Shown one piece after another: positions 24,342-61,567 of a stretch of 64,000 bases of DNA. The first letter of the stretch is position 1, and each line of letters begins with the position of its first letter. The notes under the pieces were generated by a model. It worked only from the letters and a program-made list of their open reading frames with translations, did not search any database and had not been told where the DNA came from. A program made the translations under genes and the position numbers. The stretch comes from Styela clava (lineage: Eukaryota). The stretch spans positions 4,650,001 through 4,714,000 of the forward strand of contig NC_135264.1 of assembly GCF_964204865.1 (NCBI RefSeq). Direction: 5' to 3'.

Positions 24342-26154
24342 ATGACATTATTAAATGATATAACATACAAAGTTATTGACTGCAGCAATTTGTGCTCAGT
24401 TCGAACCTTGATCGAAGAACATTACACGTCAGATTTAGCTTTGGGAAAGTATTTGAATTGCACTAAAGAAGATTTAATACCGACATATTATACTCTAATA
24501 GAGGTTGGCTAATTTAATTATCAGATTTGGAATATATTATATACACATAAGTGTATATAACAAGTCGATTGTCTTGTTTGGTTTATTAATTGTAGACTGG
24601 TGGTCAAAATTCAATTTCTCTTCTTTAGGTTTGAGTCTAAGTTATGTAAATCATATTGTAGCAGTTGTTACAGTCTGTTATCATTGTTGTGTAAAAACCA
24701 AAGTTTTAATTTTAAGTTTGTTTAGTATATATGGTATTTACAGCGATGTACAAATGGCTCTTCGTTTTACTCATGAAGCCAGTCGTGGTAATTACTGATA
24801 TATTTAAATTTAATTCCAGCCTTTTTTAAGCCAAGGAAATTCAATCGGAGCTTTTCATGGTAAAGATGATGATTTATGCGGAGTAGCTATCAACGTAAAA
24901 CCTAATCGTAATGATGAGATGAAATACTTAAACACGCTTCATTTAAACGAAAAGAATGCAGCTATCGAACGGGTAAGATATATCAAAACGTCTTAAATAT
25001 TTAGAAAATTCAAATATGAACCCAATATTAGTCACGAAATATGTTTTACTCAAACCTTCAAAAAATAGAATACTTACAAAAGCAGAATTTTTGTCACAAA
25101 GTTTATGGATAAGACAATAATAAAACTATGAATAAGTTCCGTGAAGTTTTATTACACCGCAGTTTTTTTCAAACCCAATCCAATCGTTTCACGAAATTAA
25201 GACTGCAACCAAGTTAGTCGATCGTTACTATTACAAATACGAGTCCAAATATGACAACGATATGCGCGTCGGAGACTTATTCAATAGTCGTCGCTGACCA
25301 GGATATATTTGACCTAACTGGTTTTAAAACCTGTTAATTTTCCGCAGATTTTCGAGAAAAATGTCTTCTCCGTAACAGTTAAGATAAATTTTACATTGTG
25401 ATAATTGGAGGCAAGTGTGTACATTGTCTCTTTTTTGATTAGCTCATGACATCGGTGAGCGGTGATGACATGCCAAATACTCTTGGAACTGACCGCTACT
25501 GGGAAATAAAAATGGTAACTGTGCATCCGAAATACAGAGGAAGAGGTTTAATGACTGAACTTGTCAAAAGGTATGAATATCCAGGTGACATTCAATAAAA
25601 ATTACTAGAATTATTGTTTTAACTACGTTGCTAGCACCAGCTGAAAGCCACTCTAGATTTTTCGTTGTTCAAGTGTTCATTACTGCCATTGTTCTGCTTC
25701 GTGTCAACGAAATATAAAAAACGGCAAGAATTTATCATACCAATACCACTTCAACCAAATTTTAGGTTTATTAAAAGCATTCCTGGCAACAAATCACAAA
25801 AAATTTATATCAAATAACATTTTTGCTCATTAATGTAATAAATATTTCGTTATAATAACATCATTCTGGGCATAGCAAAAAATAATTCAATATTTTTTGC
25901 ATCATATGCGAATCATTTGAAAACTCATTTTCTTAAGGTCCACAATCTTGGCCAAACAAAGAGGAATAGAAAAACTAGTGATGTTTCAAACATACGACCA
26001 AAGCTTGAAATCTCCGGAAAAAATGGATGGCTTTGAAATTATTAAACAATTAGATTTAAGAGAATACGTTGATTCAGTCACGAGAAAGAAAGAGTTTTCA
26101 GGAATGAAGCCGCCATACCACTTACAAGTCATTATTGTCAAAAAAGTTTTTTAG
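24342..26154 (+). CDS. GNAT N-acetyltransferase, insect-type AANAT-like, copy A, 219 aa; exons 24342-24503, 24820-24972, 25443-25570, 25938-26154
   Basis: GT-AG introns in phases 0/0/2 give a 660-nt open CDS. GNAT motif A is VTVHPKYRGRGL. C-terminus EKMDGFEIIKQLDLREY..F..MKPPYHLQVIIVKK resembles insect dopamine N-acetyltransferase as I recall it; no search was run. Confidence 0.88.
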
Positions 26155-26443
26155 AGTATACAAAGAACAATGACAGATGGAAAGCATGGTGTTGAAACCA
26201 ATTTATAAGTTTTTTTTATGTAAATGCATGAACCAGGGTTGCTCGAAACGAATCGAATACCATCGAATACTTTTTCAGCTTGTTTTAGAATAATTCCAAA
26301 TGATGATCACTTTTGGGCCACATCAAAACGATTTTCTGCGATTTGTCAAGTGTTGTTACGGTGATGAAATATAATCGGCAATTTTATTGTTTGTTATCTT
26401 CTGTGAGAGCGCGACGCATATTGTTGCGACATCTTTGTACGAT

Positions 26444-26659
26444 TAGGAATTACATATTTAACCCGGAGGAGAAGAAAACCCTAATCATATGACAAACGAC
26501 GCTCTCTCGTCCGGTTATCTGTCCATGTCGGGTACGGGATTAATTAGCCAGTTATTTTGGTTCAGATGCGTGGACTTAATGGTAGATGAATCCGTAACCG
26601 ACCAGCGGAGTCCGTGAATCCTCTTGCACATTATTATTACTCACGGAATTCGAACCTGG
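26444..26659 (-). mobile_element. Diverged SINE copy 3' of copy A
   Basis: The reverse complement contains B-box GGTTCGAATTCC plus taatcccgtacccgac and taaccggacga, which are shared with the 12542 SINE. Confidence 0.65.
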
Positions 26660-27149
26660 TTGCAGACACAATTCAGCATATTTCCTGAAAAAGTTTGGAT
26701 AAATTAATGGGGAGTAATATTAAACATGGAGGCGGTTCACACGTCTCGCGTTGATCCGACCAATAGCAGAACGTAAATAAGTTGTGTTCACGCGCTTTTT
26801 TACCATAAATATTAACTTGTCGCAAGTCCGAAACAAGTTGATTTATTCGGAAGAGTATGGAAAAATAATTTATACTTTTTGGCAAATAATTTTGATAAGA
26901 ATAAATAGAAGAATCGACGTTTCCAAAAGATGATTTTCCTCGCGCTTACTAATCAATCCATGGCTGATACCTGCATTTAAAATACTTTGCCGTATAAATT
27001 TAATCCTGTTCAACGTAACATAAATTTGAGTCGACTTTAAATACCACGGCAAACTATGGACATAGAAGATGTGGTAAACTGCATGATTGTATTTAATTTT
27101 TGATGTGTATTTTCGTACTTGAGAAAAAATAAAAATTATTACTCTGAAA

Positions 27150-27942
27150 TGCAAAATATTCCAACTGTTGGATAAAACGAATGTTTTCACTTTCACAAAA
27201 TATGTTAATCCATTTTTCATTCGGATGGGGTGTATATTGAAGATTTTGGCGTTGAAACAAAATTTAGTTCTGAACCTACGGTTTTTATTCCACTATATAA
27301 CATTAAAATATGAATTCATCTGAATTGTTCAATCATTCAATGTTTCAATATTTTCCAAGGTTGGCATATTGAGATAATAGCATCTAAGGAAAGAAAGTGA
27401 TTTATATTCTTAGACCAGCGGTTCTCAAACTTTTAAATACAATATATGTGAAATCTTAACTACGTTTCCATATACGTTGATGCTTGACATACAGATAAAC
27501 TTTACGCCTAATTACTGCGTTTCAGTCTGGTAAATAAGTACACGACATTATTTTGTTAATATGTTTTGTATTCGAGTAAATGCTGTACTTTTTGTGGAAA
27601 ATCAACCATGTGAAACGATATTTATGTTCAAAACAGTATCCAATAATTTATTACTGTTGCTTGGCAGTTCTCATCGTAATTTTTGGAGTATTGAGTTAGT
27701 TGGCTCAGCCTTAAAATTTGGAAGTATGTGTTATGTGTTATACAATGAAGAGCATGTTATGCGTGTTAGCGAGAGCAATGAACGAATATATAGACACAAA
27801 GGTTCAAGAACTGATACCGGTAGCCAATGCAACTCGCGCGGAAATGTAACTAAGCACTGAGTTCGCAACATATTTCAAATACCCATGATTCAATATTTAT
27901 GGTATTCAAAGAAATCAAATGTCATAACAACTGTTTGTTTCA
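27150..27942 (+). repeat. Orphan duplicate of the copy-A upstream region (23505-24299) with no gene attached
   Basis: Highly similar sequence that stops at ...ctgtttgtttca, 42 nt before the point equivalent to the copy-A ATG. Confidence 0.85.
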
Positions 27943-29418
27943 GGATACCAAATACCACGGAAATCTGCGGACATAAAATGTGTGATAAACTCTACGATTA
28001 TAATTATTTTTTGATTCGTATTTTTGCAAGCTTGCAAAGTCTTCATCGCCTTTTAAAATACTGAGGTTAACTAAAGAATTCCAAAGAATACTTCCTATTA
28101 TAGTATAATGATAAATTGATCGAATATACTTAATATTGGTCAGCTTATATTTATCATAATTCGGGAAAAAATCGGATGCGGTCTAACGGTAATTTAAGAA
28201 TATAGATAAGAAGGTACATCGTGAAAATGATTGACTGTTTCAACTTCAAGGACCATTAAAAATATTTTAAAATTTTTCAATGTGTGTGCCAAAAACACAC
28301 GAAAGTTTACGATTTACAATGTCTAAAAAATTGCGGATGAGGAAATCTATGACCTGGTGATTATTTGAAAACTTGATTAATTTAAAATATAACGATTCCA
28401 TGAAAGATAGTAGAGAATTTTTCAAGTTTAGTAATGAGCGAAAAATTCTATGAAAATCATGACAATGGTGACATAGTTCGTTACAAGCGAGAGTTAATCA
28501 GCTTATACAAATGATATTTATATATCAAAGGACATGTCAAATTCCCGATTAATTTATTTTGTACAGATGCATAAGTAATCTTCAATATTCGTCCGAAAAG
28601 GCTACGATTACAGCCACGGTTAACCAAAGGGTCGCGTGTTTGAATTCGCCACAAAAATAAGATGTTCATATCTTATTTTTTGAATGGGAAGAGCTCCGAA
28701 AGCTCCTATTTCAAAAAGTATAGAAATGCTTTGACAAGAGCCATGCATGAATCTTTTATTACCCAAGGGATGCAAATGAATATTTATAGTTTTTTATTTA
28801 TTTATTGAGCTGTAAAGTTGTCTACTTACCAACGTTGTATACAATGTACATGTGAATGATACTTATGAATGATACAAAGTATACAATGCATTTTGAATTG
28901 ATAACCCACTCCATTGGTAAAGGAGTCATAGGCACAGCGTTCAGAGTCAAGGCAGGCATATACAGAACAAATGAGCTGAAAAATATAAATGTAGTTAGGC
29001 GTTTGAGTGTTCGAAATATTATTTCCTGAGAGCAGTGAGAGAAGAACATTCCTTATTTGGCAACTTATGAAGCGAAGTCCGAAGGTTATACGTTTATAGA
29101 TTTTTAGACAACAATTCAGCACCTTTTTACAGAGCGTCCTAGTAAGACCCTTGAATTGCATAGAATAGTCATTTTCACACTTGCTAAAACATCCTTGCGT
29201 TATGCGCATACGGATCCACCAGCACAGAATTATATAGAGCAAGGGAATGAAGTCAGTCCCACGTAACCCCAACCGTTAGTTCTATTTTTTGATTACCCTT
29301 TGAATATTTTAAAAAGTCATGATTAAATATTTATGTTATCAAAAAAAATCAAATGTTATAACAAGTGTTTGTTTCAAGGTAAAAGAACAATTGTTCTATA
29401 ACACAATTTAACTAAGTT

Positions 29419-31513
29419 ATGACATTATTAAATGATATAACATACAAAGTTATTAACTGCGACAATTTGTGCTCAGTTCGAGCTTTGATCGAAGAACATT
29501 ACACGCCAGATATCGCGCTTGGAAAGTATTTGAAATGTACCAAAGAAGATTTGATACCGACTTATTATACTCTACTAGAGGTTGGCTAATTCAACACCAG
29601 ATTTGGAATAGATATAATATATTTATATATAGGAAAATATGACAAGTCGATTGACTTCTTTGTTTTATTATTAATTGTAGACTGGTAGTTTAATTCAATA
29701 GACATCCTCTCAGATTGAGTCAAAGTTATGTAAATCATATTGCAGAAGTTGTTACAGTCGATATCCCTGTTGTGTAGAAACCCAATTTATAGTTAGGTAT
29801 GAAAATTACTGTGGTGCTAAAATATTGTACAAATATTGCCCAAGCGATTCAGTATTCTTTACATGTATAAATTGTTTTTGTTTTACACGTGGAGCTAGTC
29901 TTAGTAATAATTGATATATTCATATATTTAATTCCAGTCCTTTTTAAGTCGAGGAAATTCAATCGGAGCTTTTTGTGGTAAAGATGATGAGTTGTGTGGA
30001 GTAGCGATTAACGTAAAACCTAACCGTACTGATGAGATGAAATACTTGAAAACGTTTCATTTAAACGAAAGGTATGCAGCTATGTACCGGGTAAGATATA
30101 TCACAAAGTCTAAAAATATACAAAAAATCAAATATGAATTCAATAGAAGTCACGAAATATGTTTTTAAAACAAAAATCAACAAGAATCTCTCCTTTTGTC
30201 TTAAAGTTTATGGATACGACTAAATTAGAATTATGAATGAGTTTCTTTCGTCATGCTATATATTTGCTGGGGAAGTTTCATTACACTGCAGTTTTTTTCA
30301 ACCAAGTAAGTCAATCGTTACGTTTAAAAATACGAATTCGAATATGACAACGATATACCTATTGATGAAGTATCCAATTGAACGTTATTGCAGACCAGGA
30401 TATACTTGACTTGATCTGAGCGGTTTTGAAAAATGGTAATTCTCCGCATAATTGTCGAGAAAAACCTCTTTTCCATAACAGTTAGGATAATTTATATATC
30501 GTTATAACTGAAGGCAATTGTGTACATTCTCTCGTCTGTTTCGATTAGCTCATGGCATCGATTAGCGGTAGTGACATGCCAAATATTCTTGGAACTGACC
30601 GCTACTGGGAAATAAAAATGGTAACTGTGCATCCAAAATACAGAGAAAGAAGTTTGATGACTGAACTTGTTAAAAGGTATGAATATCCAGAAGCATGGTG
30701 GTGAGTTTCTGTTAAAATTAATAAAAACATTGTTGTGACTACGTTGCTAGCACATGCTGAAAGATCTGAATCGATGCTTAAAGAGCTGATGGACACTCTC
30801 AACACACTTTAGTGACGACAAAAAGGCCAACTTATAACAAGATTGTTCATTTGGAACAATAACTGAATTAGCTACAGGACCTAATTTGGTAACGTCGACC
30901 TAACGTGGTTCTTATGAGGTCGACCAAAGACGACGTCGTGTATAATAATAATTCATAGAAAGTTGTCATTCAAATACATAAATTTAGTGTCACTCCCATT
31001 CACATTTTTTATTATTCAATCCTCCATCACTGCCATTGTTGTACATAGTGTCAACTAAAGATAACGAAAGTCAAGGAGTTATCATACCAATAACCACTTC
31101 AACCAAATTTCCTGTTGATTATGGCATTCCAGGAAACAAATAAAAAAAAATTAATATCATTCTCCTAAAAAATTTTGCTTGTTGATGTAATATATATTTT
31201 GTTAAAATAACATTGTTTCGTGCCTAGAAAAATTTATTTCAATAGATTTTGCTTCATATTCGAATCAATTGGAGATTCATTTTATAGGTCTAATATCTTG
31301 GCGAAACAAAGGGGAACAGAAAAACTGGTGATGTTTCAAACATACGACCAAAGCTTGAAGTCTCCGGAAAAAATAGATGGCTTTGAAATTATTAAACAAT
31401 TAGATTTGAGAGAATACGTTGATTCAGTCACGGGAAAGAAAGAGTTTTTAGGAATGAAGCCGCCATACCACTTACAAGTCATTATTGTCAAAAAAGTATG
31501 CTGGAGTATATAA
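29419..31513 (+). CDS. AANAT-like GNAT copy B, 222 aa, altered acetyl-CoA loop; exons 29419-29580, 29938-30090, 30549-30676, 31288-31513
   Basis: Same exon structure with an open frame. Motif A reads HPKYRERSL instead of HPKYRGRGL. The stop TAG has become TGG, extending the C-terminus to KKVCWSI. Confidence 0.8.
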
Positions 31514-31809
31514 AGAGAAATTACGGATGGCAAGCATGGTGTTGAAAATATAAATATCTCAATCTTTAAAAAATGTAGATGCATGAACCAGGATTGTCCA
31601 AAACAACCGAATATTTGAATTTCAAAGAATTCGATTTTCTTATTTAGCTTATTTTAGAATAATTTCCAATATTGGTCCTTTTTCTGCCTCAGCAAAACGA
31701 TTTTCTGTGATTTGTCACGTGTTGCTATGGCGTTGAAATAGAATCGGCCTCGATTATCCGTTATCTTATGTGGGAGCGTGCGACGCATATTGTTACATCT
31801 GTGAACAGT

Positions 31810-32045
31810 TAGGATTTTCATACTTGTACCGGAGGAGAAGAAAACCTTGATCATGTTGTGAACGACTGCTTGTCGTCCGGTTATCAGTCCATGTCCGGTG
31901 TTGGATCAGGTAGGCTTATTTCGTATTCAGATGCGTGGACCTGATGGTGGAGGAACTAACCAGCGGTTACGTAAACCACCCTTACGACGACGAGGAGTCA
32001 AGGAATTCTCTCGCACATTATTATTACCCACGGGATTCGAACCGG
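31810..32045 (-). mobile_element. SINE copy 3' of copy B, at the same position as the one after copy A
   Basis: Aligns by eye with 26444-26659 (ccggaggagaagaaaacc..cgtccggttatc..ttcagatgcgtggac..attcgaacc). Confidence 0.65.
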
Positions 32046-32489
32046 ACCTATGGATCATTAATATGTTGTTGCTGTTGTTCTTGTTTTTGCGTGACTTCTT
32101 ATCGTTGTGAAAAATTGATTGCTTTGAAATTTTCAGTGCTCGGAGATTGATTTTTTTGATAGAAGGCTATTACTTTTATTTATTTCAAATATTTTTGTGG
32201 GCTCCATAAGATTTATTTTTCGTGTGATATGACGTCATAAAAATTTGCCACCTTGTGGCTACTCCGCGCACGCATATCAGCGAGTCTTGTGCGCTGCGCT
32301 ACATCGCCGACTTGGAACAGTTATTATTTGAACTGAATCATGAAGAATGGATCCTTGTCACAGAACTTGGGAAAGCTACGACAGAACCTGTACGTCACAG
32401 GTACCCTGGGTAGTCGAGTTATCTCGAAGGTTTGTCCGTTTAGTCGAGTTGTCCATGTGGTGCAGTCGAGTTGTTCGTCTTCCGTAAGT

Positions 32490-33384: not shown

Positions 33385-33460
33385 CCTGTCCCACTTGTTC
33401 CACATGTCCCACATACCCCACTTGTACCACGTGTCTCACTTGTTCCACGTGTCCCACACA
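33385..33460. repeat. 9-bp-period tandem repeat (ccacttgtt / ccacrtgtc)
   Basis: Translates as PLV PHV PHT PLV PRV SLV PRV PHT. Absent from the homologous segment near 47110. Confidence 0.7.
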
Positions 33461-36182: not shown

Positions 36183-39100
36183 ATGACATTATTAAATGAT
36201 ATAACATACAAAGTTATTGACTGCGGCAAATTTTGCTCAGTTCGAGCTTTGATCGAAGAACATTACACGCAAGATATCGCTCTGGGGAAGTATTTGAAAT
36301 GTACTAAAGAAGATTTGATACCGACATATTATACTCTACTAGAGGTGGGCTTATTTCATCATCAGATTTTGAATACATTATATCAGGGTGGTCCAAGTTT
36401 GCGAGGTTGGGCCGCAAAAACTTTTGAGGAGGTTTTGCGGGAAACAGTCGGAGAAAACCCAAGAGGGATCAAAACATCGCGAATTTAACAACTTTAAATA
36501 TATTTATCAAGCATGAGAAATATTTTTGAAGCAAATTTGATTCTATAGGACTTTTTAAGATTTTTGGCGTTCACCGTTTGCAAAACGTTGACTTCGTTTG
36601 CGAGACTCGAAGTTTTAGAAGTCAACCCTGCCGAATTCGCACGGAAATTAGTATGCCCCGTTGATGACATAGAAGTGAGAACTCGTCGGTGGGTGTAATT
36701 TTGCCATAGATCAAAGTCGATAATAGCGATCCGTGTATTAATTTTGAACCGTATGCTAGTTCTATTGGGCGGTGTATTTGGAAAACGCTTTAATAGTTTA
36801 AGTACATACCAATATCTTCAAAATATTATTGCATTACAGCAATAATATTGATATTACAGTCAACAAATCGAGGTCAAGAGGTACTCGAGTTCTGTGCTGG
36901 ACCTTTTGCTGCAACATATTTCCCAGTAAAATAACGCAAACCAGGCTATTTTTTGTCTCAAATCATCTAGATTTTATAATTTATGTAAGTTTATTCTGCT
37001 TTTCTGATCCTGTAATTAGTCCTCTTGTTATATTGTCGATATATATAAACGTTGTCAGAATTAGCATACCGGTATATGTACTCTAAAAAAGACCTCTAAT
37101 TTGAAAGATCGTTTTAGCCTCAATATTATGTTAGAATAAATGCAAACTCCTGCTCATAACTCGAAACAACAATACCAAATACAACCAACACAACACAACC
37201 AAATACTCCAAACAAAACGACAATCATACAATAAAGCGACAAGTACCAGCCAGGCAATGCAAGAAAACATAATATACACAATAAAAACACTTTGAACAGT
37301 ACTGATGATAGATATTTCTCTGACAACAACCAAAAATACAACGCTAAAATAACTGCAATGGCACTGCACTGAAACAATAATATCAGCTTACTGTCTAGCA
37401 TAAAAACATCCAACAAATTCCCCCCGCAATCACAAAACCACAAACAAACATCCCTGATAACCCACCGGAGACCAGAGGCACTCCCATATACACTCATGAC
37501 CAGAATCTAACCGAAAACCAACCACACTGTACCGGTACCAACCGCATCACACTAAACCACACGCTAACAGCCACACCAAAAAGAACAGAACCGACAGTGT
37601 CACAGCGCCCCCAGTGTCCCTAAAGCCGAAATATCAAATAAGGCAATAATATCAAATGACAGCATTTAACAGATAAAACAAGGGTCGTCACACAAGTTTT
37701 CATCATATGCAATTCAAACGTTTTCTCACGAATCTCCCTTGGTTGATCTATAACAGCTGAGCTGTGTTGTTACAGGAGTGTAAACTGGAAAAATTAAAGT
37801 ATACAAATAAAATTGATAGAACTGGCATAAAGAAATTAGAATATTATCACCAGACAGATTAGTAACGTTCAGCATGCAACAGAAATAATGTGAAATGAAT
37901 AAAAAACTAAATCCTTTCTGGTTATTTTATGTTTACCTGGTAGACTTTCACTCTCTAGGTAAATGTATCAATTTGTACTGTTCAGACACTCAAGTTGCAA
38001 TTTAAACCATGTGCAAAATTGGTTTATATAACAGTTTAACTTGCTAGCAATATACATTAACTGATTATCACGTCATACAGCCGAAAAACGGAGTAAAGTG
38101 GTTAAAACTTACTCTAGAATCAGTTTTCCAAGGCCCATTGACGGCCATTCAGTTCCACTACGTTCACTACATAAAACGCCATTACTTTATCTACTTTCAG
38201 TCAGAGCTTTATATACATCAGCATTTCTGTTTTTTTGTTACATTATTGTTTCACTTTTTATGAAACTACGCAATGAGAAACTAATATTAAACGCCAAAAC
38301 AGAGGTTAAACAATCTACTCGCGAAAGCACGATGAGAGCAAGTTCTGGAATGAGTTCTCACTACTTCGTCATTTCCAAAAAGCTGTCGACTTTCGTTCAA
38401 GCGGTTTTTAAAAATTCATAAGTACGAAACTAAGTCAAAAGTTCTGAAAATATATAAAGATTCGAATTCCTCAAAAACATTTTCCATGGGGCTTAATTAA
38501 CATAAAAAAATATTGCCCGAGCGATAAACGATTCAGTATTTTTTACATGTATATTTATTTTTGTTTCTTGTTTTACACAAAAAGCTATTTCTAGTAATTA
38601 TTGATATATTCATATTCATTTCCAGCCTTTTTTAAGTCGAGGAAATTCAATCGGAGCTTTTTATGGTAAAGATGATGAATTATGTGGAGTAACTATCAAT
38701 GTGAAACCCAATCGTACTGATAAGATGAAATACTTGAACTCGCTTCATTTAAGCGAAAAGGACGCGACTATGTACCGGGTAAGATATATCACAAAGTCTA
38801 AAAATATACAAAAAATCAGATATGAATTCAATAATAGTCACGAAATATGTTTTTGAAAGATAAATCAACTAGAATCAAATCTCTTTTTGTCACAAAGATT
38901 ATGCATACGACTATATTGGAATTATGAATGAGTTTCTTGGTCATGGTATATATTTGCTGGGGAAGTTTCATTACACTGCAGTTTTTTTTTCAACCCAATC
39001 CAATCGTTTCACGAAATTAAGACCGCAACCAAGTAAGTCAATCGTTGCGATTACAAATACGAATTCAAATATGACAACGATATACTTATCGGAGACGTAT

Positions 39101-40601
39101 TTAATTAAAAGCCATTGCTGACCAGGATATACTTGACTTGACCTGAGCGGTTTTGAAAAATGTTAATTTTTTACAGAATTGTCGAGAAAAACCTCTTCTC
39201 CATAACAGTTAAAATAATTTATATATCGTTATAACTGAAAGCAATTGTGTACATTCTCTCGTCTTTTTCGATTAGCTCATGGCATCGATTAGCGGTAATG
39301 ACATGACAAATATTCTTGAAACTGACCACTACTGGGAAATGAAAATGATAACTGTGCATCCAAAATACAGAGGAAGAGGTTTGATGACTGAACTTGTCAA
39401 AAGGTATGAATATTCAGATGCATGGTGGTGACTTCCAGTAAAAGTTACTAGAAACATTGTTGTAGCTACATTGCTAGAACCAGCTGGCCGACGCCGACGT
39501 TATTGCCGACGCTATGTGAAGCAATTCTCGGAGAACAAAATACACGGTCGATACAATTTAATGGGAACAAATATAGGCCATTTTATTGTTTTCAATTTCA
39601 GCTTACAAGCTCGTTCGACTGGAGCAATACCTGGATTAGCTATTACCATATGGGATCAAATTTGATAATACTAATCGACATCAAACTATTATAAATATTA
39701 TATTCTAATATTTTGATATTAGTCATGGTTCGTATGAAAATCGACCAAAGATGACTTCATGTATGTTAATAATTTATCAATTACAAAAAACGAGAATATC
39801 GGTCAGAGACCGAAGATTTAACGATCGAAAGTTAGGGGATCCCCCAAAACAGCGCTCTTACTTCATAGTGACACCTTGCGTCCCATCACTAATTAATTAA
39901 TAACTCGCTAATTATACAACATAATTCGCCCAAAATCAATAGGCTTCTGGTCCGAGATAAGATGAATGCACATGCAAAATCTGGAGCAGATTCAATCTCG
40001 CTTTCGTGAGATATCGCGTGAATCTAACAGACAAATACCTAACAACATACTTACCGATTAAAATCGATAAGTAATTAGTGTCACTCTGATTTAGCTTTTT
40101 ATTATTTACGCTTTCATCACTGCCTTTGTTGTGCATGGTGCCAAGTAAAGATAAAGAACGGCAACAATTTATCGTAATCTTACTATTTTAACCAAATTGC
40201 ATGTTGATTATGGCATTCCAGGAAACAAATCACGAGAAATTTATAATGAATCTTATTTTCTTGGATAATCTTGCCCATTCATGTAACATATATTTTGTTA
40301 ACCTAACATCGTTTTGGGCCTAGATAAAATAATTCAATATATTTTGCATCATATGCAAGTCAACTGAAAACTCATTTTGTTAAGGTCCACAATCTCGGCC
40401 AAACAAAGGGGAATAGAAAAACTGGTGATGTTTCAAACATACGACCAAAGCTTGAAGTCTCCGGAAAAAATGGATGGCTTTGAAATAATTAAACAGTTGG
40501 ATTTGAGAGAATACGTTGATTCAGTAACGGGAAAGAAAGAGTTTTCAGGAATGAAGCCGCCATACCACTTACAAGTCATTATTGTCAAAAAAGTATGCTA
40601 G
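36183..40601 (+). CDS. AANAT-like GNAT copy C, 219 aa; exons 36183-36344, 38626-38778, 39276-39403, 40385-40601
   Basis: Same exon lengths, GT-AG introns and an open frame. Motif A is ITVHPKYRGRGL. Intron 1 is enlarged to ~2.3 kb by insertions. Confidence 0.85.
39790..40072. mobile_element. Non-autonomous Helentron/DINE-1-like element in intron 3 of copy C
   Basis: Absent at the homologous site of copy D (caattacaataaattagtgtc, ~45781). Palindrome TCGGTCagaGACCGA at one end and ttaccgattaaaatcgataagtaa at the other. No long TSD. Confidence 0.6.
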
Positions 40602-50030: not shown

Positions 50031-51673
50031 ATGGCGTCAATAACAAATCTCACTTACAAAATTCTGAGCGTAAAACATCTATGCGCTGTTAGGAATTTGG
50101 TCGAAGAACATTTCACATCTACGTACTTATTGGGAGTATACTTAAATTGGACGAAAGAAGATCTGATTCCTGCATATTATTCTCGGATAGAGGTAATGGA
50201 GTGTAGCCTATACTTGACCTTATACGTATGGGACTATGAGCATGAGGCAAAAATAAACTCCCAAGTTTTAATTTTTGATAAAATAAGCAAGAAAAACTTT
50301 TGGTAAATTTCTATTACATACACAACAAGGCATTTGATCGCCATTTTGCGTAAACTACGTAATTGCTACTCGCTTGTTATGATATCTTTTATGTAGATAT
50401 CTAGGGTCTCTTTCTGTCCAATACCGAATTGTTTGTCTATTGACCCAAACTTATAAATAAAAGTGATCGTCATCACTGGTAATTAGAATATCATTCGCAA
50501 GAACAGTTACCTATTTTTTGTTAGTGAGAAAACATTCCACAGTAAATGCGGGGTCTTTACTTTACCTGCCCAAGCCTCATGTTTGCTCCAAAGAATTTCA
50601 TAGAGTTTATATCAAATCACTTGTTATTGTAATCTTTAGAAAACTAGAGACTGAATAGTAGTTCTGTTCAAATAAATTTACTTAAACTAGGTGAGCATCA
50701 AACTGCAAGAGCAATAGCCATGACAAAAATTTCTATTATTCTCTTATTATTCTATTATAGGTTAATTACACAATTAATCCATAGTAAATAATGGAATATA
50801 TATATACTACATAAGGATATTGCTAATTTATCGACTACGTTGTTAATACCGGTATCAATAAAATAAAATACTCTGTATTTATTTTACCAAATCAGTTCAA
50901 TGAATTGATCTCTTAAATATTTTCGTCTTGAGAACATTGAGTGCTTTTATATAAATATAATACTCTATTTCATTTCAGTCTTTCTTAAGGCAAGGAAATT
51001 CACTCGGGGCATTCAGTGATAAAGATGCTAAATTACGTGGAGTTGTCATCAAAGTGGAACACGACGATAATGAAAAAATAAAATATGAAAAAGCACTACA
51101 TATCAGTGAAAAGACAGATACTATAAATCGGGTAGAAAATATATTTTTGACTTCAATTTACTTTGAATATTCTTTTGCGATATTGCCCGTAAATGTATTA
51201 AATTAAACAATACATATGTTTATATGTGTAAAGCTCATGGTGGCAATTGGAGTAAATCAATTATCTGACATTCTTGGAACCAAAAAATTTTGGGAGATGA
51301 GAATGGGAACTGTGCATCCAAGTTACAGAAGGAAAGGACTATTGCCTGAACTTACAAAAAGGTAAGATCAGTGAATGTATTTATAGTGATACAACTTTTT
51401 CTGAACTTATTATCATCATATCGATATTAAAACTTTACTATTTTCTTGAAATTTAGATCTACAGTTCTTGCCAAACAAAGGGGAATTGAGAAACTTGTAG
51501 CATGTCAAACATATAATAAAGCTCTGGTAGAACCTTCGAAAATGGACGGATTTGAAGTAATCAGACACATTGAATTGAAAAACTATCTTGACCCCGTCAC
51601 AGGGCACAAAGTTTTTTCGGGGATGAAACCACCAAATGACGTGCAAGTTTTAATCGCTAAAACTTTGACTTAG
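50031..51673 (+). CDS. AANAT-like GNAT copy E (divergent subfamily II), 219 aa; exons 50031-50192, 50979-51131, 51234-51361, 51457-51673
   Basis: Exon lengths and phases identical to copies A, C and D. Motif A is GTVHPSYRRKGL. Introns 2 and 3 are short (102 and 95 nt). Confidence 0.88.
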
Positions 51674-55414: not shown

Positions 55415-55590
55415 TTACTGACATAAACAAGCATCAAGGTAAAGATTTTTTAATGCTTGTTTGAATAGAATATAATTTATGGAACTGATTGAATCAGGAA
55501 GCGTATTCCATACTTTCACACCCACAAATTTTATAGTGTTTTGTGTAAATTTAGCAGAGTAACGAGTTACATAATAAGAGCTGCTGGTAG
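55415..55590 (-). mobile_element. CR1/L2-group LINE ORF2 extreme C-terminal fragment
   Basis: YYVTRYSAKFTQNTIKFVGVKVWNTLPDSI resembles FFITRTNSKFAQNSIRIMGPKIWNDIPD of the 1-1443 element. Confidence 0.65.
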
Positions 55591-55638
55591 AGTTACATAA
55601 TAAGAGCTGCTGGTAGTCAACCCACGTTTTACGTTCTT

Positions 55639-56155
55639 TCAAGTCAAACGAACTAAAGACGATGCTATGGTGGCATAACCAGGCACATAACGCCTATAAT
55701 AGTTGGTAGTTTCCAAGAAACTTCTAACATCTGATACTCCTTGAGGCGTTTTCCAATCCGCTATTGTTGCGACATTGTGAGGATCACAGCAAACTCTTTC
55801 GAAAGAAATTTTGTATCCAAGGTAGGTTACTGATCGATGGAACAACTGACATTTTGTCGATTTAAGTTTCAAACCAGCACCGCGAAATTGAATGAGAACT
55901 TTCTTCAAACTGCTCAACGGCGCGTCAATATCTGATCCGAGGGCTGAAACATCATCCAAATAATTTGAACAACCTATCCCGACTTTTCCGCCCATCACTC
56001 GGTCCATCATCCGCTCAAACGTTGCAAGCGCATTGGACAGGCCAAACGGCATGACTACAAATTGGTAGTGTCCTTTTTCAGGGAGACTGAGAACACATTT
56101 CTCTCTGTCAGACGGATCTAATTCTACCTGCCAGTATACACTGGCCAAGTCAAGC
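55639..56155 (-). mobile_element. Ty3/Gypsy LTR-retrotransposon RT fragment
   Basis: LDLASVYWQV..MPFGLSNALATFERMM..YLDDV..KCQLF..VTYLG..VRSFL..YYRRYVPGYA. Confidence 0.88.
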
Positions 56156-56269
56156 GCGAGTTTACCACCCAGACCAACAAAAATGTCCTTAAAGTCTCAC
56201 AGCAAAAAAAAAATTGTTAATACTGGTGAGCCGAAAGTACCTCAGTCGAGGTAATCAAATCTTGTAGAT

Positions 56270-57047
56270 CAGTGGTCGGCAAACTTCATGTACTTGCGGG
56301 CCAAATATCAACTTATTTGGTTGCGCGCGGGCCGTATAATTCCGCCTTCGAAGAATCGCCACAATGAACTTCAAATTACGGCGCATTCGCACCTTCTATT
56401 ATTGCGTTAAAAGCCTGCCGCAGTGAGATTTGTATGTGGCCTCTTTTGATATACTAACCAACAATACATTGTTTTTATTCACTCATTATTATCAATGTGA
56501 AGGATGGTGTTTTTATGGCAACTTTAATGTCAAAATCCCCTAATATCTAGGATGCTGACTCGGCATATTTATTATAACTTCCAAGTGTAATTCATTTAAG
56601 ATAAAGGTGCTCCCAGCACAATGAGCTTCCGAACGTGCAGATAACACGTTTTGTACTGTTTCGTAACGAGATTAACATTAAATTCCCTAATATCTGCGAT
56701 GCAGACTGGGCATATCGAGCAAACTGGTTTTGAAATGTGCAAAAAAAAAAATATTTTTCGCCCAAGCACTTTGGAATGTTCGACCTTTGTCGCGAACTTC
56801 CCTCCGTTTCCCAGACAATTTTACATTTTATAAATTGACATTAACTCGAATGACATACAACTGACCCTACTTATTACGAAACAAGCGCCGTACACCAGCA
56901 CTTGTTAAAACATAAATCCGTGTAAAAACAATAATAAATTTAGGAATAATTTTTGTTTTATGTATTAAATGTTGGGTCGTTCGAGGGCCGCAATAAATTA
57001 GCTCGCGGGCCGCATTTAGCCCGCTGGCCGCAGTTTGCCGACCCCTG
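56270..57047. mobile_element. hAT-type MITE (uninterrupted family member)
   Basis: TIRs CAGTGGTCGGCAAACT / AGTTTGCCGACCCCTG with perfect 8-bp TSD TTGTAGAT. Confidence 0.9.
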
Positions 57048-57099
57048 TTGTAGATGATCAGGTAAACCATCAGGTTCACCAGTCTTACAGAAAGTAAAA

Positions 57100-58760
57100 T
57101 TTGATCAATCTAAAATAGAAATGATTCCATGAAATATAGTAGAGAATTTTTCAAGTTCAGTAATGAGCAAAAAGTCCTATCAAAAATCATGACACTGTTG
57201 TAATAGTTAATTAGAAACGAGAGTCAACCAGCTCATTCAAATGATATTTAAATATCCAGGGACATGTCAAAATTTACGATTGATTGCTTTCGTACAGTTG
57301 CACAAGTAATTTTCAAAAGGCTACGATGAAAGTAATGGCTAACCAAAGGGTTGCGTGCTGGTATTCGCCTAAAAAATAAAATGTTCAAATCCCACTTTTT
57401 GAAAGGGAGTATAAGTACTTTTCTACAAAGGGAAGACAGGAAGGCAAGTTGGTCCAAACAACATTCCAGCACGCTTTCTTAAATCAGTTGCTGATCTGCC
57501 TGTGCCATGTTCAGTTGAATTTTTCAATTGTTCAATTTTGTTCGAAATTTTTCCTGCATGTGTGATTGCACACCTTGCTCTCGGGTGATTCCCCTTTTCA
57601 AATCTGGCAATAAAAAACTTCTGTCAAATTACAGACCAAATTCGATACTTTTAACGAATAGGAAAAATATTTGAGCGTTTGATTTATAAGCGGCTTACTA
57701 ATGTTTTTATAAAACATGATGTAATAAATATATCTCAAATTGGTTTAATAAGTAATCTGTCTACATCGCATGCTATTTTGGGTTCAATATCATATATCTA
57801 TGATAAACTAGAAAGGATAATGTTTGAAACTGCAACATTTTGAGATCTAAGGAAGGCCTTCGATACCGTAAATCATGACATCCCAGTTTACAAGTTGAGA
57901 CACTTCGGTATTAGGGGTATAGCGAACAAATTAATTTATAGTTATTTAAGTAATATATTTCAGTATGTTCAAGTGGGGTCGTATTCTTCCTCTCCCTTAC
58001 CAGTGACTCACGGAGTTCCTCAAGGTAGTTGTTTGGATCCACTGCTTATTTTAGTATATATTAACGACATATCTTATCTCTCTTCATTCTTTTCCAAATT
58101 GATTACTGAAGATACTAATCTCTTTTACAGCGACAAATCTTGTGCAGCCATCCTATTTAGAGTGAATTCTGAAATTGCGAAAATATCTAATTGGATGAGG
58201 TTCAATAACCACACCAACGCAAATCTGAAAATGGTATCGCAATCCAAATTAATGATAAAAAACTCGAAAATGTTTATTCCTATAAATATCTTGGCGTATA
58301 CATAGGTAGCAAAATGAAATGAGATGTTCACTTATCCAAATTGGTCGTTAAATTATCCAAGTCGGTTCGAATACTATACAAGCTTAAAATTTACATCGCT
58401 AATAACACTACGGATGATTTACTGCTCCTTATTTCAGAGCCATATCCAATATGGCACAATCAGTGGCGTATCTACATAAAATTGCGCCCATGGCAAAATT
58501 TGAAGATGCGCCCCCCTTGATAGTTAGTTCACAATTTATAATGACTCTCATAGGAATGAGTTAATTGTACGTTATTATTTGAGTAAAACTACGAGTTTCA
58601 GGTATTACCAATTCGAAATTATTTTATTGAAATATTTAACGATTGAAACTTTTCTCCTTTTTAGCGCCCCTGTCCAAACGGCGTCCATGGCACGAGCCAT
58701 GGCTGCCACACCCTAGATACGCCCCTGGGCACAATTGCCTGGGGTTCAGCTGATAAAACC
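57100..58760 (+). mobile_element. Decayed CR1/L2-group LINE fragment (duplicate of 47250-48900), with the MITE at 58461-58727
   Basis: HFGIRGIANKL..GVPQGSCLDPL. The same MITE is present with TSD GGCACAAT. Confidence 0.8.
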
Positions 58761-59755
58761 CTTTATTGTTATCGACCCTTCTTTGTATCGAGTAATTTGT
58801 CACGGATTTTTGACCCTCATTTGGGAGTTGAGAATATGGTGTTTTTCATAATTTTTGCATTATTACCGATTTGGATTTTAACCGTATATAAATGGTAGTA
58901 AGGTTTCAGTGTATATATATTTCAATATATATATTTTTTTGGATTCAATTCGATCTGACAAGAATTTGGCAATACAATCCATTGTGTGCTTATTGAAGGA
59001 GTGCAAATCAGCGATTCACTCCGTATAATGTAACTGGTGAAATAGAAGTTGCACAAGATGTATGAGCATGATTGATGCTGTCGTCAGTTAAAGTTGACAG
59101 ATCGTGACTTTGCAGTTCTCGTGACTTTTCACTTCTCAGTTGTGTCACAGCAGATCAATATTTGCATCATTTCCTTTATCTCGTGTACTTGCTTCGCAAT
59201 ATTATTATCATGTGCCCGTTATGTTGTGTAAGGCTTTTCAAGCATGGTTGTAAACATTGAATCGGTTCGTATTCATGGTTTTGAGTGCCATTTATAGGTT
59301 TTTAATTATATTTCAAAATTCAGAGAACTCAATGGTCATTTCGTCTGATCGACTTTTGTTTTAGTTTTCGTAATCCAAAATTAGTTCTAGAAAAACTCCG
59401 ATAGACAAAAGTAGATACCAGTTTTATTTTTAAATTATAAGCGGTTAGGTATTCGAATCAAAGTAGAGCCCCAGACTGCGGTTAGTTCACCGGTATGTAG
59501 CCAACTAATAGCCTCCAGCAAGTTGTTTACATAACGAACGAGCGTATACCACTCAATTGCGAGGTCGGGGAAATCTGACAGCAGCATGTCTTGTTGACCA
59601 AGCAGTTTGCAAGTGTGCTTGCTGGCCGACTACAAATAGAATTTATCAGAAAAAAACTAAACAAAAATGCCTTTCACATCAGACAGGGGTTGTGCAACAT
59701 AGGCCATCGTACTACGTTATATCCCTAAGCTGACATTTTGCAAGTGTGCTTGGCC

Positions 59756-59797
<42 letters not shown>

Positions 59798-59921
59798 ATA
59801 TTTATTATATATGCATATTATTGTTGACAGACTGTTATATTATCCATTTCATCCAAATTTTCTAATGAAGACAAATTTTAGCAATTGTTTGTAACTTTTT
59901 ACTTTATGATAAATCTATATT

Positions 59922-61567
59922 ATGGCGTCAATAACAAATCTCACTTACAAACTTCTAAGCGTAAAGCATCTATGCGCTGTCAGGAATTTGATCGAAGAAC
60001 ATTTCACATCTACATTCTCATTGGGAGTATATTCAAATTGGACGAAGGAAGACTCGATTCCTGCATATTATCCTCGGATAGAGGTAGCCTACTTGACAAA
60101 GATGCAAATGTTATTTTCCTCAAATAACGCATATTTGCTCCTTCATTTATATTATACGTATAGTACTACTATAGGCATGAGGCAAAAATAACTCCCAAGT
60201 TTTATTTTTTGATAAAATAGGCAAGGAAAACCTTTGGTAAATTTCTATTACATACACCACAAGGCATTTGATTGCCATTTTGCGTAAACTACGTAACTGC
60301 TACTCGCTTGACTGCTACTCGCTTGTTATGATATATTTTATGTAGATATCTAGGGTCTCTTTCTGTCCAATACCGAATTGTTTGTCTATTGACCCAAACT
60401 TATAAATAAAAGTGATCGTCATCACTGGTAATTAGTATATTATCATTAGCAAGAACAGTTACCTATTTTCTGTTTGTGAGAAAACATTCCATAATAAATG
60501 CGGGGTCTTTACTTTACCTGTCCAAGCCTCCTTTTTGCTCCAAAGAATTTCATAGAGTTTATAATAAATCACTTGTTATTGTAATCTTTAGAATACTAGA
60601 GACTAAATAAGAATTTCAACTAATCAATATTAATACTTTTATTTATTATTCTATTATAGGTTAATTACACAATAAATCCATGGTAAACATGGAATATATA
60701 CTACATAAAGATATTGCTAATTTATCGACTACGTTGTTAATACCAGTATCAGTAATATAAAATATTCCGTATTTATTTTACCAAATCAGTTCAAGAAATT
60801 GATCTCTTAAATATTTTCGTTATGAGAACATTGATTGCATTTATATAAATATAATAATCTATTTTATTTCAGTCTTTCTTAAAGCAAGGAAATTCACTCG
60901 GGGCATTCAGTGACAAAGATGCTAAATTACGTGGAGTTGCCATCAATGTGGAACACGACGATAATGAAAGAATAAAATATGATGAAACACTACATATCAG
61001 TGAAAAGACAGATACTATAAATCGGGTAGAAAATATATTTTTGACTTCAATTTACTTTTAATCTTCTTTTGCGATATTGCCCGTAAATGTATTAAATTAA
61101 ACAATACATATGTTTTATATGTGTAAAGCTCATGGTGGCAATTGGAGTAAATCAATTATCTGACATTCTTGAAACCAAAAATTTTTGGGAGATGAGAATG
61201 GGAACTGTGCATCCAAGTTACAGAAGGAAAGGACTAATGCCTGAACTTATGAAAAGGTAAGATCAGTAAATGTATTTATAGTGATACAACTTTTTTGAAC
61301 CTATTATCATCATATCGATATTAAAACTTTACTATTTTCTTGAAATTTAGATCTACAGTTCTTGCCAAACAAAGGGGAATTGAGAAACTTGTAGCATGTC
61401 AAACATATAATAAAGCTCCGGAAGAACCTTCGAAAATGGACGGATTTAAAGTAATCAAACACATTGAATTGAAAAACTATCTTGACCCCGTCACAGGGCA
61501 AAAAGTGTTTTCGGGGATGAAACCACCAAATGACGTGCAAGTTTTAATCGCTAAAACTTTGACTTAG
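59922..61567 (+). CDS. AANAT-like GNAT copy F (subfamily II), 219 aa; exons 59922-60083, 60873-61025, 61129-61256, 61351-61567
   Basis: Identical exon lengths and an open frame. Motif A is GTVHPSYRRKGL. Confidence 0.88.

What the first reader, a model, noticed from the sequence alone, without database searches (positions are those of the whole stretch)
24342..61567. Hidden six-gene tandem array of insect-type AANAT-like acetyltransferases
Seen: six same-strand genes, visible only after splicing, all with open frames, canonical splice sites and conserved exon lengths (162/153/128/217 nt, with copy B exon 4 nine nt longer). A GNAT motif A lies in exon 3. Knowledge: size (~220 aa), layout and C-terminal pattern match my recollection of insect dopamine/arylalkylamine N-acetyltransferases rather than vertebrate AANAT. 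Inference: a locally expanding, diversifying small-molecule acylation system in a probable non-insect invertebrate. Possible roles are amine inactivation, catecholamine-based tanning, or defensive-metabolite synthesis or detoxification. It may be undescribed.
Basis: partly seen in the sequence, partly recalled or inferred. Interest (0 to 1): 0.82.

Follow-up and report, generated by a model that had tools for sequence, protein, structure and literature searches.

The report
Tunicate array of insect-type AANAT-like genes
The six spliced genes are real and at least one is expressed; they are the first six of about 24 tandem copies, in the sea squirt Styela clava, of an insect-type amine acetyltransferase family, and every copy examined lacks the family's usual catalytic glutamate.

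Summary
Six + strand genes each have four exons of 162/153/128/217 nt (copy B exon 4 is 226 nt), GT..AG at all 18 introns, and an open 219 or 222 aa frame.

The genome is Styela clava, a tunicate. RefSeq already holds identical models for copies A, B and C, named "uncharacterized protein". Contigs of three public runs skip copy A's introns at the predicted sites.

The window holds only the start of the array. A profile of exon 4 finds 24 hits, all on the + strand, over about 267 kb of the same contig, and 39 in the genome.

Sequence and fold both place the proteins with insect-type AANATs (Aedes aaNAT2, Tribolium AANAT, Drosophila Dat) and not with vertebrate AANAT. Insect-type AANATs were already reported in Ciona in 2015.

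Two things appear new. One is the scale of the expansion. The other is that the array belongs to a clade, so far seen only in Styela, in which the DEPLN general-base Glu is replaced by a hydrophobic residue. Other Styela paralogs keep Glu-Pro (one has Asp-Pro).

dN/dS is 0.13-0.65, which indicates constraint relaxed in the young copies and not clear positive selection.

The most likely function is acyl-CoA-dependent N-acylation of small amines with altered catalytic chemistry. The substrate is unknown.

The parts
24342..26154 (+). Copy A (type I), 219 aa. Exons 24342-24503, 24820-24972, 25443-25570, 25938-26154.
   Evidence: Model. It is 100% identical to P0001, RefSeq LOC120334600 isoform X3. 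Contigs of runs X1-X3 show the exon 2-3 joint, X2 shows the exon 3-4 joint, and 17 loose letters before exon 2 match the end of exon 1.
24429..24443 (+). Copy A residues 30-34 (S-D-L-A-L). Residues 31-35 (D-L-A-L-G) are the equivalent of the insect DEPLN motif; Leu32 stands where the general-base Glu would be.
   Evidence: Four alignments agree on this register: MAFFT, hhalign, HMMER of P0001 against 4fd5, and HMMER of profile A7 against 4fd5.
25524..25562 (+). Copy A motif A core (HPKYRGRGLMTEL, residues 133-145), the acyl-CoA pyrophosphate-binding loop, in exon 3.
   Evidence: Pfam Acetyltransf_1 hit on exon 3 and on P0001 (33.2 bits). It aligns with YRGLGIAG of Dat and FRGKGLAK of aaNAT2.
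27150..27950 (+). Orphan duplicate of copy A's upstream region (23505-24307), 93% identical, with no exon 1 after it.
   Evidence: blastn. Low-depth contigs of the runs lie on it.
29419..31513 (+). Copy B (type I), 222 aa. Exons 29419-29580, 29938-30090, 30549-30676, 31288-31513. Motif A is degenerate (RERS for RGRG) and the C-terminus is 3 aa longer.
   Evidence: It is 100% identical to P0014, RefSeq LOC120334600 isoform X2.
36183..40601 (+). Copy C (type I), 219 aa. Exons 36183-36344, 38626-38778, 39276-39403, 40385-40601. Intron 1 is 2281 nt.
   Evidence: It is 100% identical to P0013, RefSeq LOC120334430.
44091..46302 (+). Copy D (type I), 219 aa. Exons 44091-44252, 44632-44784, 45279-45406, 46086-46302.
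   Evidence: It is 91% identical to A in protein, with dN/dS 0.18.
50031..51673 (+). Copy E (type II), 219 aa. Exons 50031-50192, 50979-51131, 51234-51361, 51457-51673. Introns 2 and 3 are short (102 and 95 nt).
   Evidence: It is 53% identical to A in protein and is the first of the roughly 10 kb type II units.
59922..61567 (+). Copy F (type II), 219 aa. Exons 59922-60083, 60873-61025, 61129-61256, 61351-61567.
   Evidence: It is 97.7% identical to P0018, RefSeq LOC120334267.
55642..58302 (.). Decayed reverse-transcriptase fragments inside the type II repeat unit (55642-56148 on the - strand, 57519-58302 on the + strand). An older copy lies at 47667-48423.
   Evidence: Pfam RVT_1, 59.7 and 35.7 bits; paralogy seen.

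Best explanation
The window (Styela clava, contig C19, 4.650-4.714 Mb) holds the first six members of a tandem array of about 24 genes spread over about 267 kb. Each gene encodes a single-domain GNAT protein of about 25 kDa, with no extra domain, that is homologous to insect-type arylalkylamine N-acyltransferases (iAANAT/AANATL: Drosophila Dat, Aedes aaNAT2 and aaNAT5b, Tribolium AANAT).

Shown here:
- The gene models.
- Spliced transcripts of copy A.
- Family and fold assignment.
- Two subtypes: type I is copies A-D and type II is E, F and the rest. They are 50-56% identical to each other.
- Selective constraint on the coding sequence.
- Membership of a clade, so far found only in Styela, in which the DEPLN general-base Glu is replaced by Leu, Ile, Tyr or Phe. 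The acyl-CoA-binding motif A (Y-R-G-R-G), the residue aligned with Dat Ser182 (Thr166) and an invariant acidic residue at the Dat Asp142 tunnel position (Glu126) are kept.

Inferred:
- The proteins still bind acyl-CoA in the beta4/beta5 cleft and transfer the acyl group directly to a small amine in a ternary complex.
- Deprotonation is done by a different residue or by water, or is not needed for the substrates in question. Candidates are Glu126, or His133, which is invariant in the six window copies.
- The array grew by unequal crossing-over of units of about 5-10 kb that carry retroelement debris, and later by duplication of larger blocks.

The substrate is unknown. Possibilities include monoamines, catecholamines, polyamines and xenobiotic amines.
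For: Gene models:
- Searches give the models.
- They are identical to the RefSeq proteins P0001, P0013 and P0014.

Expression:
- Intron-skipping contigs occur in three runs of one study: 24971>25442 (skip 470) in X1-X3, and 25567>25935 (skip 367) in X2.
- Depth is zero inside introns 2 and 3.

Family:
- Pfam PF00583 scores 33.2 bits on P0001.
- phmmer of P0001 against the PDB gives 6v3t at 1.8e-7, 4fd5 at 1.1e-5 and 4fd4 at 5.8e-4.
- The profile of the array clade alone (A7) gives 4fd5 at 9e-10, 4fd4 at 1e-7, 6v3t at 2e-6 and Dat at 0.005; its ten best hits are all insect-type AANATs.
- The mixed profile A5 gives 4fd5 at 5e-23 and Dat at 3e-14, with no vertebrate AANAT at E<=1.
- The AF2 model has pLDDT 87 and pTM 0.84.
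- The listed Foldseek hits down to rank 23 are all the iAANAT group (TM 0.67-0.81); sheep AANAT 1cjw is at rank 28 with TMq 0.55.
- The nearest Atlas clusters are arthropod GNAT and aralkylamine N-acetyltransferase clusters.

Extent of the array:
- There are 24 exon-4 hits on C19 between 4675939 and 4941559, all on the + strand, and 39 genome-wide.
- There are 18 intact models in the 264 kb I could read.

Constraint:
- dN/dS is 0.18-0.34 within type I, 0.13-0.24 between types and 0.65 for E/F.

Loss of the Glu:
- Searches show it.
- The tree splits the paralogs that keep the motif from the Glu-less clade with 100/100 support.

Role of the Glu in characterised enzymes:
- Dat E47A lowers kcat 168-fold (PMC3429931).
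- The DEPLN motif is highly conserved among insect AANATs, but in Dm-AANATL2 the Glu is not the general base (PMC6070697).
Against: - No enzymatic data exist for any member.
- The general-base Glu is missing. In type II the residue aligned with Ser186 is Ala and the one aligned with Asp46 is Thr, so catalysis could be weak or absent.
- Copy B has lost both glycines of motif A.
- RNA support comes from contigs of runs whose RNA label is only a guess. It covers copy A and one mosaic type I transcript, not copies E and F.
- 'Styela-specific' rests on searches of limited reach.
Confidence: 0.72

Rival explanations
1. The array encodes pseudoenzymes. On this reading the proteins keep the insect-type AANAT fold but have lost acyl transfer and act as binding or buffering proteins for CoA esters or amines, or as regulators.
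For: All copies lack the DEPLN Glu, whose mutation nearly abolishes activity in four characterised insect AANATs (PMC6070697, PMC3429931). Type II also lacks the residues aligned with Ser186 and Asp46. Copy B has a degenerate motif A. dN/dS is about 0.6 among the young type II copies.
Against: Motif A, the beta4 Lys128, Thr166 and Glu126 are conserved across a clade with saturated dS, which is what a working cofactor site would produce. Many GNATs work without a dedicated general base, and in Dm-AANATL2 the Glu is not the base (PMC6070697). Amplifying a gene 24-fold is more typical of metabolic or detoxifying enzymes.
Confidence: 0.18
2. The array is mostly decaying duplicates, that is, pseudogenes kept open by chance or by gene conversion.
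For: One copy outside the window has a premature stop (g19). There is one truncated copy, some exon-1 fragments and an orphan upstream region at 27150-27950. Two outside copies have GG in place of the intron-1 acceptor AG.
Against: 18 of 19 full-length copies have intact 219/222 aa frames. dN/dS is well below 1 across dS of 0.2 to more than 1.4. Spliced transcripts exist. All six window copies have canonical splice sites.
Confidence: 0.05
3. The copy number is an assembly artefact, with haplotigs or false tandem duplicates.
For: Outside the window, a block of about 50 kb recurs at 99.4-99.9% identity about 95-102 kb away, and a second block of about 21 kb recurs at 98.5%. The first could be assembly redundancy.
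Against: The six window copies differ by 7-37% in CDS and have different intron lengths and flanks. RefSeq predicts separate proteins for A, B and C. Even if the near-identical block were collapsed, about 19 loci would remain.
Confidence: 0.03

Closest known systems
Insect-type arylalkylamine N-acyltransferases (iAANAT/AANATL): Drosophila Dat/AANAT1 (3TE4), Aedes aaNAT2 (4FD5), aaNAT5b (4FD4), Tribolium AANAT (6V3T), Dm AgmNAT (5K9N)
   Same: They share length (about 215-220 aa) and full-length co-linear alignment. The AF2 model superposes on them with TM 0.67-0.81. They share motif A (Y-R-G-x-G), the beta4 Lys, a Thr or Ser at the Dat Ser182 position, an acidic residue at the Dat Asp142 position, and the C-terminal Y-x-D-x-x-G-x-x-x-F...P-P pattern.
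   Different: The DEPLN motif reads D-L-A-L-G, D-I-A-L-G, H-I-P-L-G, T-Y-L-L-G or T-F-S-L-G, so the general-base Glu and the Pro are gone. Type II also has Ala at the Ser186 position. Identity to the insect enzymes is only 17-24%. The host is a chordate. The genes sit in a tandem array of about 24.
Insect-type AANAT homologues reported in deuterostomes (2 in Ciona intestinalis, 4 in Saccoglossus kowalevskii; Hiragaki et al. 2015, PMC4394704)
   Same: They are the same enzyme family in a urochordate, so the presence of the family there is already known. Styela also has paralogs that keep Glu-Pro or Asp-Pro at the motif (P0008, now named 'arylalkylamine N-acetyltransferase 1-like' by NCBI, plus P0012, P0023 and the L014 and L015 ORFs).
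   Different: There are at least 39 exon-4 matches in Styela clava against 2 genes reported for Ciona. The expanded clade has lost the catalytic Glu. I could not retrieve the Ciona sequences to test orthology.
Vertebrate and non-vertebrate type AANAT (sheep serotonin N-acetyltransferase 1CJW; the amphioxus NV-AANAT expansion, Pavlicek 2010)
   Same: They share the GNAT fold and, presumably, an amine substrate class. Amphioxus also shows a lineage-specific expansion of an AANAT-type family (as cited in PMC4394704).
   Different: This is a different GNAT subfamily. No sequence hit appears at E<=1, and Foldseek puts 1cjw at rank 28 with TMq 0.55. According to PMC4394704, VT- and NV-AANATs have not been found in urochordates.

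Membership tests
GNAT superfamily (Pfam PF00583 Acetyltransf_1) | Profile match above the curated cut-off, covering motif A | tested here: met
   P0001 (identical to copy A) scores 33.2 bits against a cut-off of 20.7, over residues 117-168. Exon 3 of copy A alone scores 25 bits.
Insect-type AANAT/AANATL | The closest relatives among characterised or solved proteins are insect-type AANATs, aligned over the full length | tested here: met
   For P0001 alone: 6v3t at 1.8e-7 and 4fd5 at 1.1e-5. For the array-clade profile A7: 4fd5 at 9e-10 over residues 3-215, and all ten best hits are insect-type AANATs.
Insect-type AANAT/AANATL | The insect-type AANAT fold, a GNAT core with the extra helices, fits better than other GNAT subfamilies do | tested here: met
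   AF2 gives pLDDT 87. The listed Foldseek hits down to rank 23 are all insect-type AANATs, PBCV A654L or the Ebony C-terminal domain, with TM 0.67-0.81. Other GNATs reach TMq 0.57 or less.
Insect-type AANAT/AANATL | DEPLN motif with the general-base Glu (Dat Glu47) | tested here: not met
   The aligned residue is L, I, I, I, Y, F in copies A-F. Four alignments agree, and tabulates it. Six other Styela paralogs keep E-P and one (P0012) has D-P.
Insect-type AANAT/AANATL | Asp46-Arg153 salt-bridge pair (the cofactor-sensing switch) | tested here: inconclusive
   The Arg (R137) is invariant in all six copies. The Asp position is D in A-C, H in D and T in E and F. The geometry was not examined.
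Insect-type AANAT/AANATL | Motif A, R-G-x-G, which binds the pyrophosphate | tested here: met
   It reads YRGRG in A, C and D and YRRKG in E and F. Copy B reads YRERS, so the feature is not met there.
Insect-type AANAT/AANATL | Residues aligned with Ser182 and Ser186 | tested here: inconclusive
   They are Thr166 and Ser170 in type I and Thr166 and Ala170 in type II. This is by alignment anchored on the G-I-x-K beta5 segment. One pairwise alignment, to 6v3t, shifts by one residue.
Insect-type AANAT/AANATL | Acyl-CoA-dependent N-acylation of arylalkylamines or other amines | not testable with these tools
   This needs recombinant protein assays.
Vertebrate-type AANAT (timezyme) | Sequence and fold kinship with serotonin N-acetyltransferase | tested here: not met
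   No AANAT/SNAT chain appears at E<=1 with the A5 profile. 1cjw is at Foldseek rank 28 with TMq 0.55 and 12% identity. The vertebrate catalytic residues and regulatory flanks were not checked.

The most novel reading that the evidence does not exclude
A chordate lineage has independently built a battery of more than 30 insect-type AANAT-like enzymes that work without the canonical glutamate base. They would use a different catalytic residue or a different class of acceptor to make N-acylated catecholamines or other amines for tunic hardening, blood-cell chemistry or chemical defence. That would be a biochemical parallel to insect cuticle sclerotisation in the 'leathery' sea squirt.
Probability: 0.12. 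Interest if true: 0.7.

Novelty: new variant of a known kind. Interest (0 to 1): 0.45.

Why it matters
Insect-type AANATs make N-acetyldopamine for cuticle tanning, inactivate monoamines and make fatty-acid amides. Finding them at all in deuterostomes was called unexpected in 2015. This locus shows that one tunicate has amplified a derived branch of the family to dozens of copies and changed its catalytic centre.

If the proteins are active, they offer a natural experiment on how the insect-type AANAT mechanism works without its general base. They are also a candidate source of N-acyl amine metabolites in ascidians, whose tunic and blood-cell catechol chemistry (tunichromes, DOPA peptides) still lacks assigned enzymes.

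If they are inactive, this is a large family of pseudoenzymes under selection. In both cases the finding is a lineage-specific gene-family expansion, not a new kind of system.

Tried and rejected
- Exon-by-exon searches of the PDB gave nothing significant. The best was exon 3 against Aedes aaNAT7 at E 0.18. Exons 1, 2 and 4 alone gave no Pfam hit.
I used the public proteins P0001, P0013 and P0014, which turned out to be identical to models A, C and B, by id. Full-length copies D, E and F were analysed only in local scripts and were never searched as joined proteins.
- The exon-4 profile search of 1.84 billion representative proteins found full-length relatives only in Styela clava. It also found one 89 aa fragment of unknown origin, and some multi-repeat bacterial or metagenomic proteins that look unrelated.
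- Word searches with P0001 and with profile A5 returned only Styela proteins and one unnamed Logan protein. These tools have limited reach, so this is weak evidence that the clade is absent elsewhere.
The last three array copies (one partly seen in L012) and the C16, C5, C3 and C9 clusters were therefore not modelled.
- A phylogeny with Dat, AANATL, Ciona and vertebrate sequences could not be built, because no tool gave me those sequences by reference.
- Literature searches for Styela clava with acetyltransferase, and for ascidian with AANAT, found nothing on this family.
- Two rivals were rejected for the window: haplotig collapse and chance ORFs.


Full report

Yes. A tblastn search with the first ATG-led ORF (24342-24503) finds exactly six + strand copies in the window, at 24342, 29419, 36183, 44091, 50031 and 59922, with E-values from 1e-17 to 1e-32. 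An all-against-all comparison of + strand open frames shows three further conserved blocks after each of them.

I enumerated every GT/AG combination that gives an open frame. The only model common to all six copies has exons of 162, 153, 128 and 217 nt, with 226 nt for copy B exon 4. It runs from ATG to a stop and encodes 219 aa (222 aa in B). All 18 introns are GT..AG.

**2. Independent support for the models.**

The exon-4 profile search returned a 219 aa public protein, P0001. It is identical, residue for residue, to my joined model of copy A. P0014 (222 aa) is identical to copy B and P0013 to copy C. All three are NCBI RefSeq predictions for Styela clava, named "uncharacterized protein LOC120334600 isoform X3", "isoform X2" and "LOC120334430".

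So the organism is a tunicate, and the genes are already annotated although not characterised.

Exons were searched by reference, and the full-length work used these database proteins by id. Full-length copies D, E and F were handled only in local scripts.

**3. Expression.**

Three runs of one study (X1-X3; the tool only guesses that they are RNA) hold contigs that skip copy A's introns exactly where predicted.
- The joint 24971>25442 skips 470 nt, is GT..AG, and is seen in all three runs with no mismatch in exon 2.
- The joint 25567>25935 skips 367 nt and is seen in X2.
- Depth is zero inside introns 2 and 3.
- Seventeen loose letters in front of exon 2 equal the end of exon 1.
- A contig of about 1.3 kb continues past the stop codon and is presumably the 3' UTR.

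A second type I transcript appears as a mosaic: exon 1 is A-like, exon 2 is B/D-like and exon 3 is A-like. It matches no reference copy exactly. It may be an allele or an unassembled copy, or a chimera made by the contig builder. This is unexplained.

**4. The array is much larger than six.**

The window is G000:C19:4650001-4714000. The exon-4 profile finds 24 matches on C19 between 4675939 and 4941559, all on the + strand. It finds 39 in the whole 377 Mb genome, including a five-copy cluster on C16 and single or paired loci on C3, C5, C9, C10, C13 and C16.

In the 264 kb that I could read (the window plus L018-L037) I found:
- 18 intact 219/222 aa models;
- one copy with a premature stop;
- one truncated copy;
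- several exon-1 fragments.

There are two subtypes.
- Type I is copies A-D. They are 85-91% identical in protein and spaced 5-8 kb apart.
- Type II is E, F and at least 12 more. They are 88-100% identical to one another, with units of about 10 kb and short introns 2 and 3.
- The two types are 50-56% identical to each other.

The type II unit carries decayed reverse-transcriptase pieces. It also carries a minus-strand ORF that resembles the C-terminal zinc-binding part of a retroelement ORF, and this ORF is frameshifted in most units.

Outside the window, a block of about 50 kb recurs at 99.4-99.9% identity. It is either a very recent segmental duplication or assembly redundancy. The six window copies are far too diverged to be haplotigs.

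**5. Selection.**

Nei-Gojobori estimates of dN/dS:

| Comparison | dN/dS | dS |
|---|---|---|
| Within type I | 0.18-0.34 | 0.17-0.23 |
| Between types | 0.13-0.24 | saturated, above 1.4 |
| E against F | 0.65 | 0.075 |
| Type II pairs | median about 0.6; 5 of 85 pairs above 1 | low |

This is purifying selection that is relaxed in the youngest copies. It gives no evidence of pervasive diversifying selection, and gene conversion may blur the picture.

**6. What family?**

- **Pfam.** P0001 is placed in PF00583 at 33.2 bits.
- **PDB by sequence, P0001 alone.** The significant hits are Tribolium AANAT (6v3t, 1.8e-7), Aedes aaNAT2 (4fd5, 1.1e-5) and aaNAT5b (4fd4, 5.8e-4). aaNAT7 follows at 0.009.
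- **PDB by sequence, array clade only (A7).** The profile gives 4fd5 at 9e-10 over residues 3-215, and its ten best hits are all insect-type AANATs.
- **PDB by sequence, all Styela paralogs (A5).** The profile gives 4fd5 at 5e-23 and Dat at 3e-14. No vertebrate AANAT appears at E<=1.
- **Fold.** The AF2 model is confident (pLDDT 87, pTM 0.84). The listed Foldseek hits down to rank 23 are all insect-type AANATs and their known structural kin (PBCV A654L, the Ebony C-terminal domain), with TM 0.67-0.81. Sheep serotonin N-acetyltransferase is at rank 28 with TMq 0.55.
- **Protein atlas.** The nearest clusters are arthropod GNAT and aralkylamine N-acetyltransferase clusters.

It is not new that urochordates have this family. 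Hiragaki et al. [quoted passage not shown] NCBI now names one Styela paralog "arylalkylamine N-acetyltransferase 1-like".

**7. What is different.**

Characterised insect AANATs share a DEPLN motif whose Glu is the general base. In Dat, E47A lowers kcat 168-fold (PMC3429931). The equivalent Glu-to-Ala mutants of AANATL7, AgmNAT and Bm-iAANAT3 are almost inactive, whereas AANATL2 is an exception (PMC6070697).

Four alignments agree that in the array this motif reads as follows:

| Copy | Motif in place of DEPLN |
|---|---|
| A | D-L-A-L-G |
| B, C | D-I-A-L-G |
| D | H-I-P-L-G |
| E | T-Y-L-L-G |
| F | T-F-S-L-G |

Seven other Styela family members keep the motif. Six have Glu-Pro (P0008, P0023, P0026, the two L014 ORFs and the L015 ORF) and P0012 has Asp-Pro.

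A maximum-likelihood tree separates these seven from a Glu-less clade of 25 sequences with 100/100 support. The Glu-less clade contains both array types together with P0003, P0004, P0015, P0016, P0017, P0024 and P0025. The root is unknown. The two clades are clearly homologous (hhalign probability 100%, E 7e-41).

Features kept in the array:
- motif A, Y-R-G-R-G or Y-R-R-K-G. Copy B is the exception, with R-E-R-S;
- the beta4 Lys128;
- Thr166 at the Dat Ser182 position;
- an invariant Glu126 at the Dat Asp142 position, which lines the bottleneck of the reaction tunnel in Dat (PMC7427786);
- the C-terminal Y-x-D-x-V-T-G-x-K-x-F-S-G-M-K-P-P segment.

Type II has Ala where Dat has Ser186, and Thr where Dat has Asp46.

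**8. Most likely mechanism.**

The inference is that these are acyl-CoA-dependent N-acyltransferases for small amines. They would keep the cofactor site and the tunnel architecture but deprotonate the acceptor in another way. That could be through Glu126 or His133 by way of water, or by acting on amines of low pKa.

The main rival is a family of pseudoenzymes. Neither reading can be settled without an assay. The substrate class and the physiological role (amine inactivation, tunic or blood-cell catechol chemistry, detoxification) remain open.

**9. Verdict.**

- The finding is a large lineage-specific tandem expansion of a catalytically derived branch of a known enzyme family in a chordate.
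- That makes it a new variant of a known kind, of moderate interest.

**10. Limits.**

- No insect, Ciona or vertebrate sequences were available by reference, so no joint tree could be built.
- Coordinates of the model were not available for active-site geometry.

Noticed in passing
window 1-1440 (+): An open frame running off the window start encodes a reverse transcriptase (Pfam RVT_1, 123 bits), so it is a retroelement. Decayed relatives lie between array copies at 47667-48423, 57519-58302 (+) and 55642-56148 (-).
   Followed up: partly
window 62086-62841 (-); also 52201-52951 (-): A 252 aa ORF lies just downstream of copy F. It has no Pfam hit, and its nearest Atlas clusters carry zf-RVT, the C-terminal part of a retroelement ORF. 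It recurs after most type II copies and is usually frameshifted, so it is probably TE debris amplified along with the unit.
   Followed up: partly
window 27150-27950 (+): This is an orphan copy, 93% identical, of the 800 bp upstream of copy A (23505-24307). It sits between A and B with no exon 1 behind it, and low-depth contigs of the runs lie on it. It may be the remnant of a deleted copy or an alternative 5' exon or promoter.
   Followed up: partly
window 24399-24503, 29941-30081, 25443- (contigs of runs X1-X3): Contigs join an A-like exon 1 (2 differences) to a B/D-like exon 2 (starting CCT, ending GTTTATCGA as in D) and then to an A-like exon 3. This matches no reference copy. It could be an allele or unassembled type I copy made by gene conversion, or a contig chimera.
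   Followed up: partly
window 30549-30676 and 31505-31513 (copy B): Copy B has lost both glycines of motif A (RERS for RGRG) and reads three codons past the usual stop. Its dN/dS (about 0.3) is like that of its neighbours.
   Followed up: no
C19 about 4738472-4788192 against 4833547-4890208 (outside the window; L020-L035): A block of about 50 kb holding several type II copies recurs at 99.4-99.9% identity about 95-102 kb downstream. A second block of about 21 kb recurs at 98.5%. These are recent segmental duplications or assembly redundancy.
   Followed up: partly
C19 4746034 and 4841100 copies (g09, g16; outside the window): Two otherwise intact type II copies have GG instead of AG at the intron-1 acceptor. 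They may use another acceptor or be newly disabled.
   Followed up: no
L013:846-1499, L014:1194-1862 and 3491-4141, L015:1281-1949: Several family members elsewhere in the genome are intronless full-length ORFs. The Glu-less P0003 on C13 may be a retrocopy. The paralogs on C5 and C10, which keep Glu-Pro, are also intronless, whereas the array genes have three introns.
   Followed up: partly
proteins P0002, P0005, P0006, P0009-P0011: The exon-4 profile also hit long bacterial or metagenomic proteins, with 1-8 matched stretches each, over profile positions within about 5-56. One is an 'MBG domain-containing protein' of a Verrucomicrobiota MAG. These are probably chance likeness to a repeat and not kinship.
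   Followed up: no
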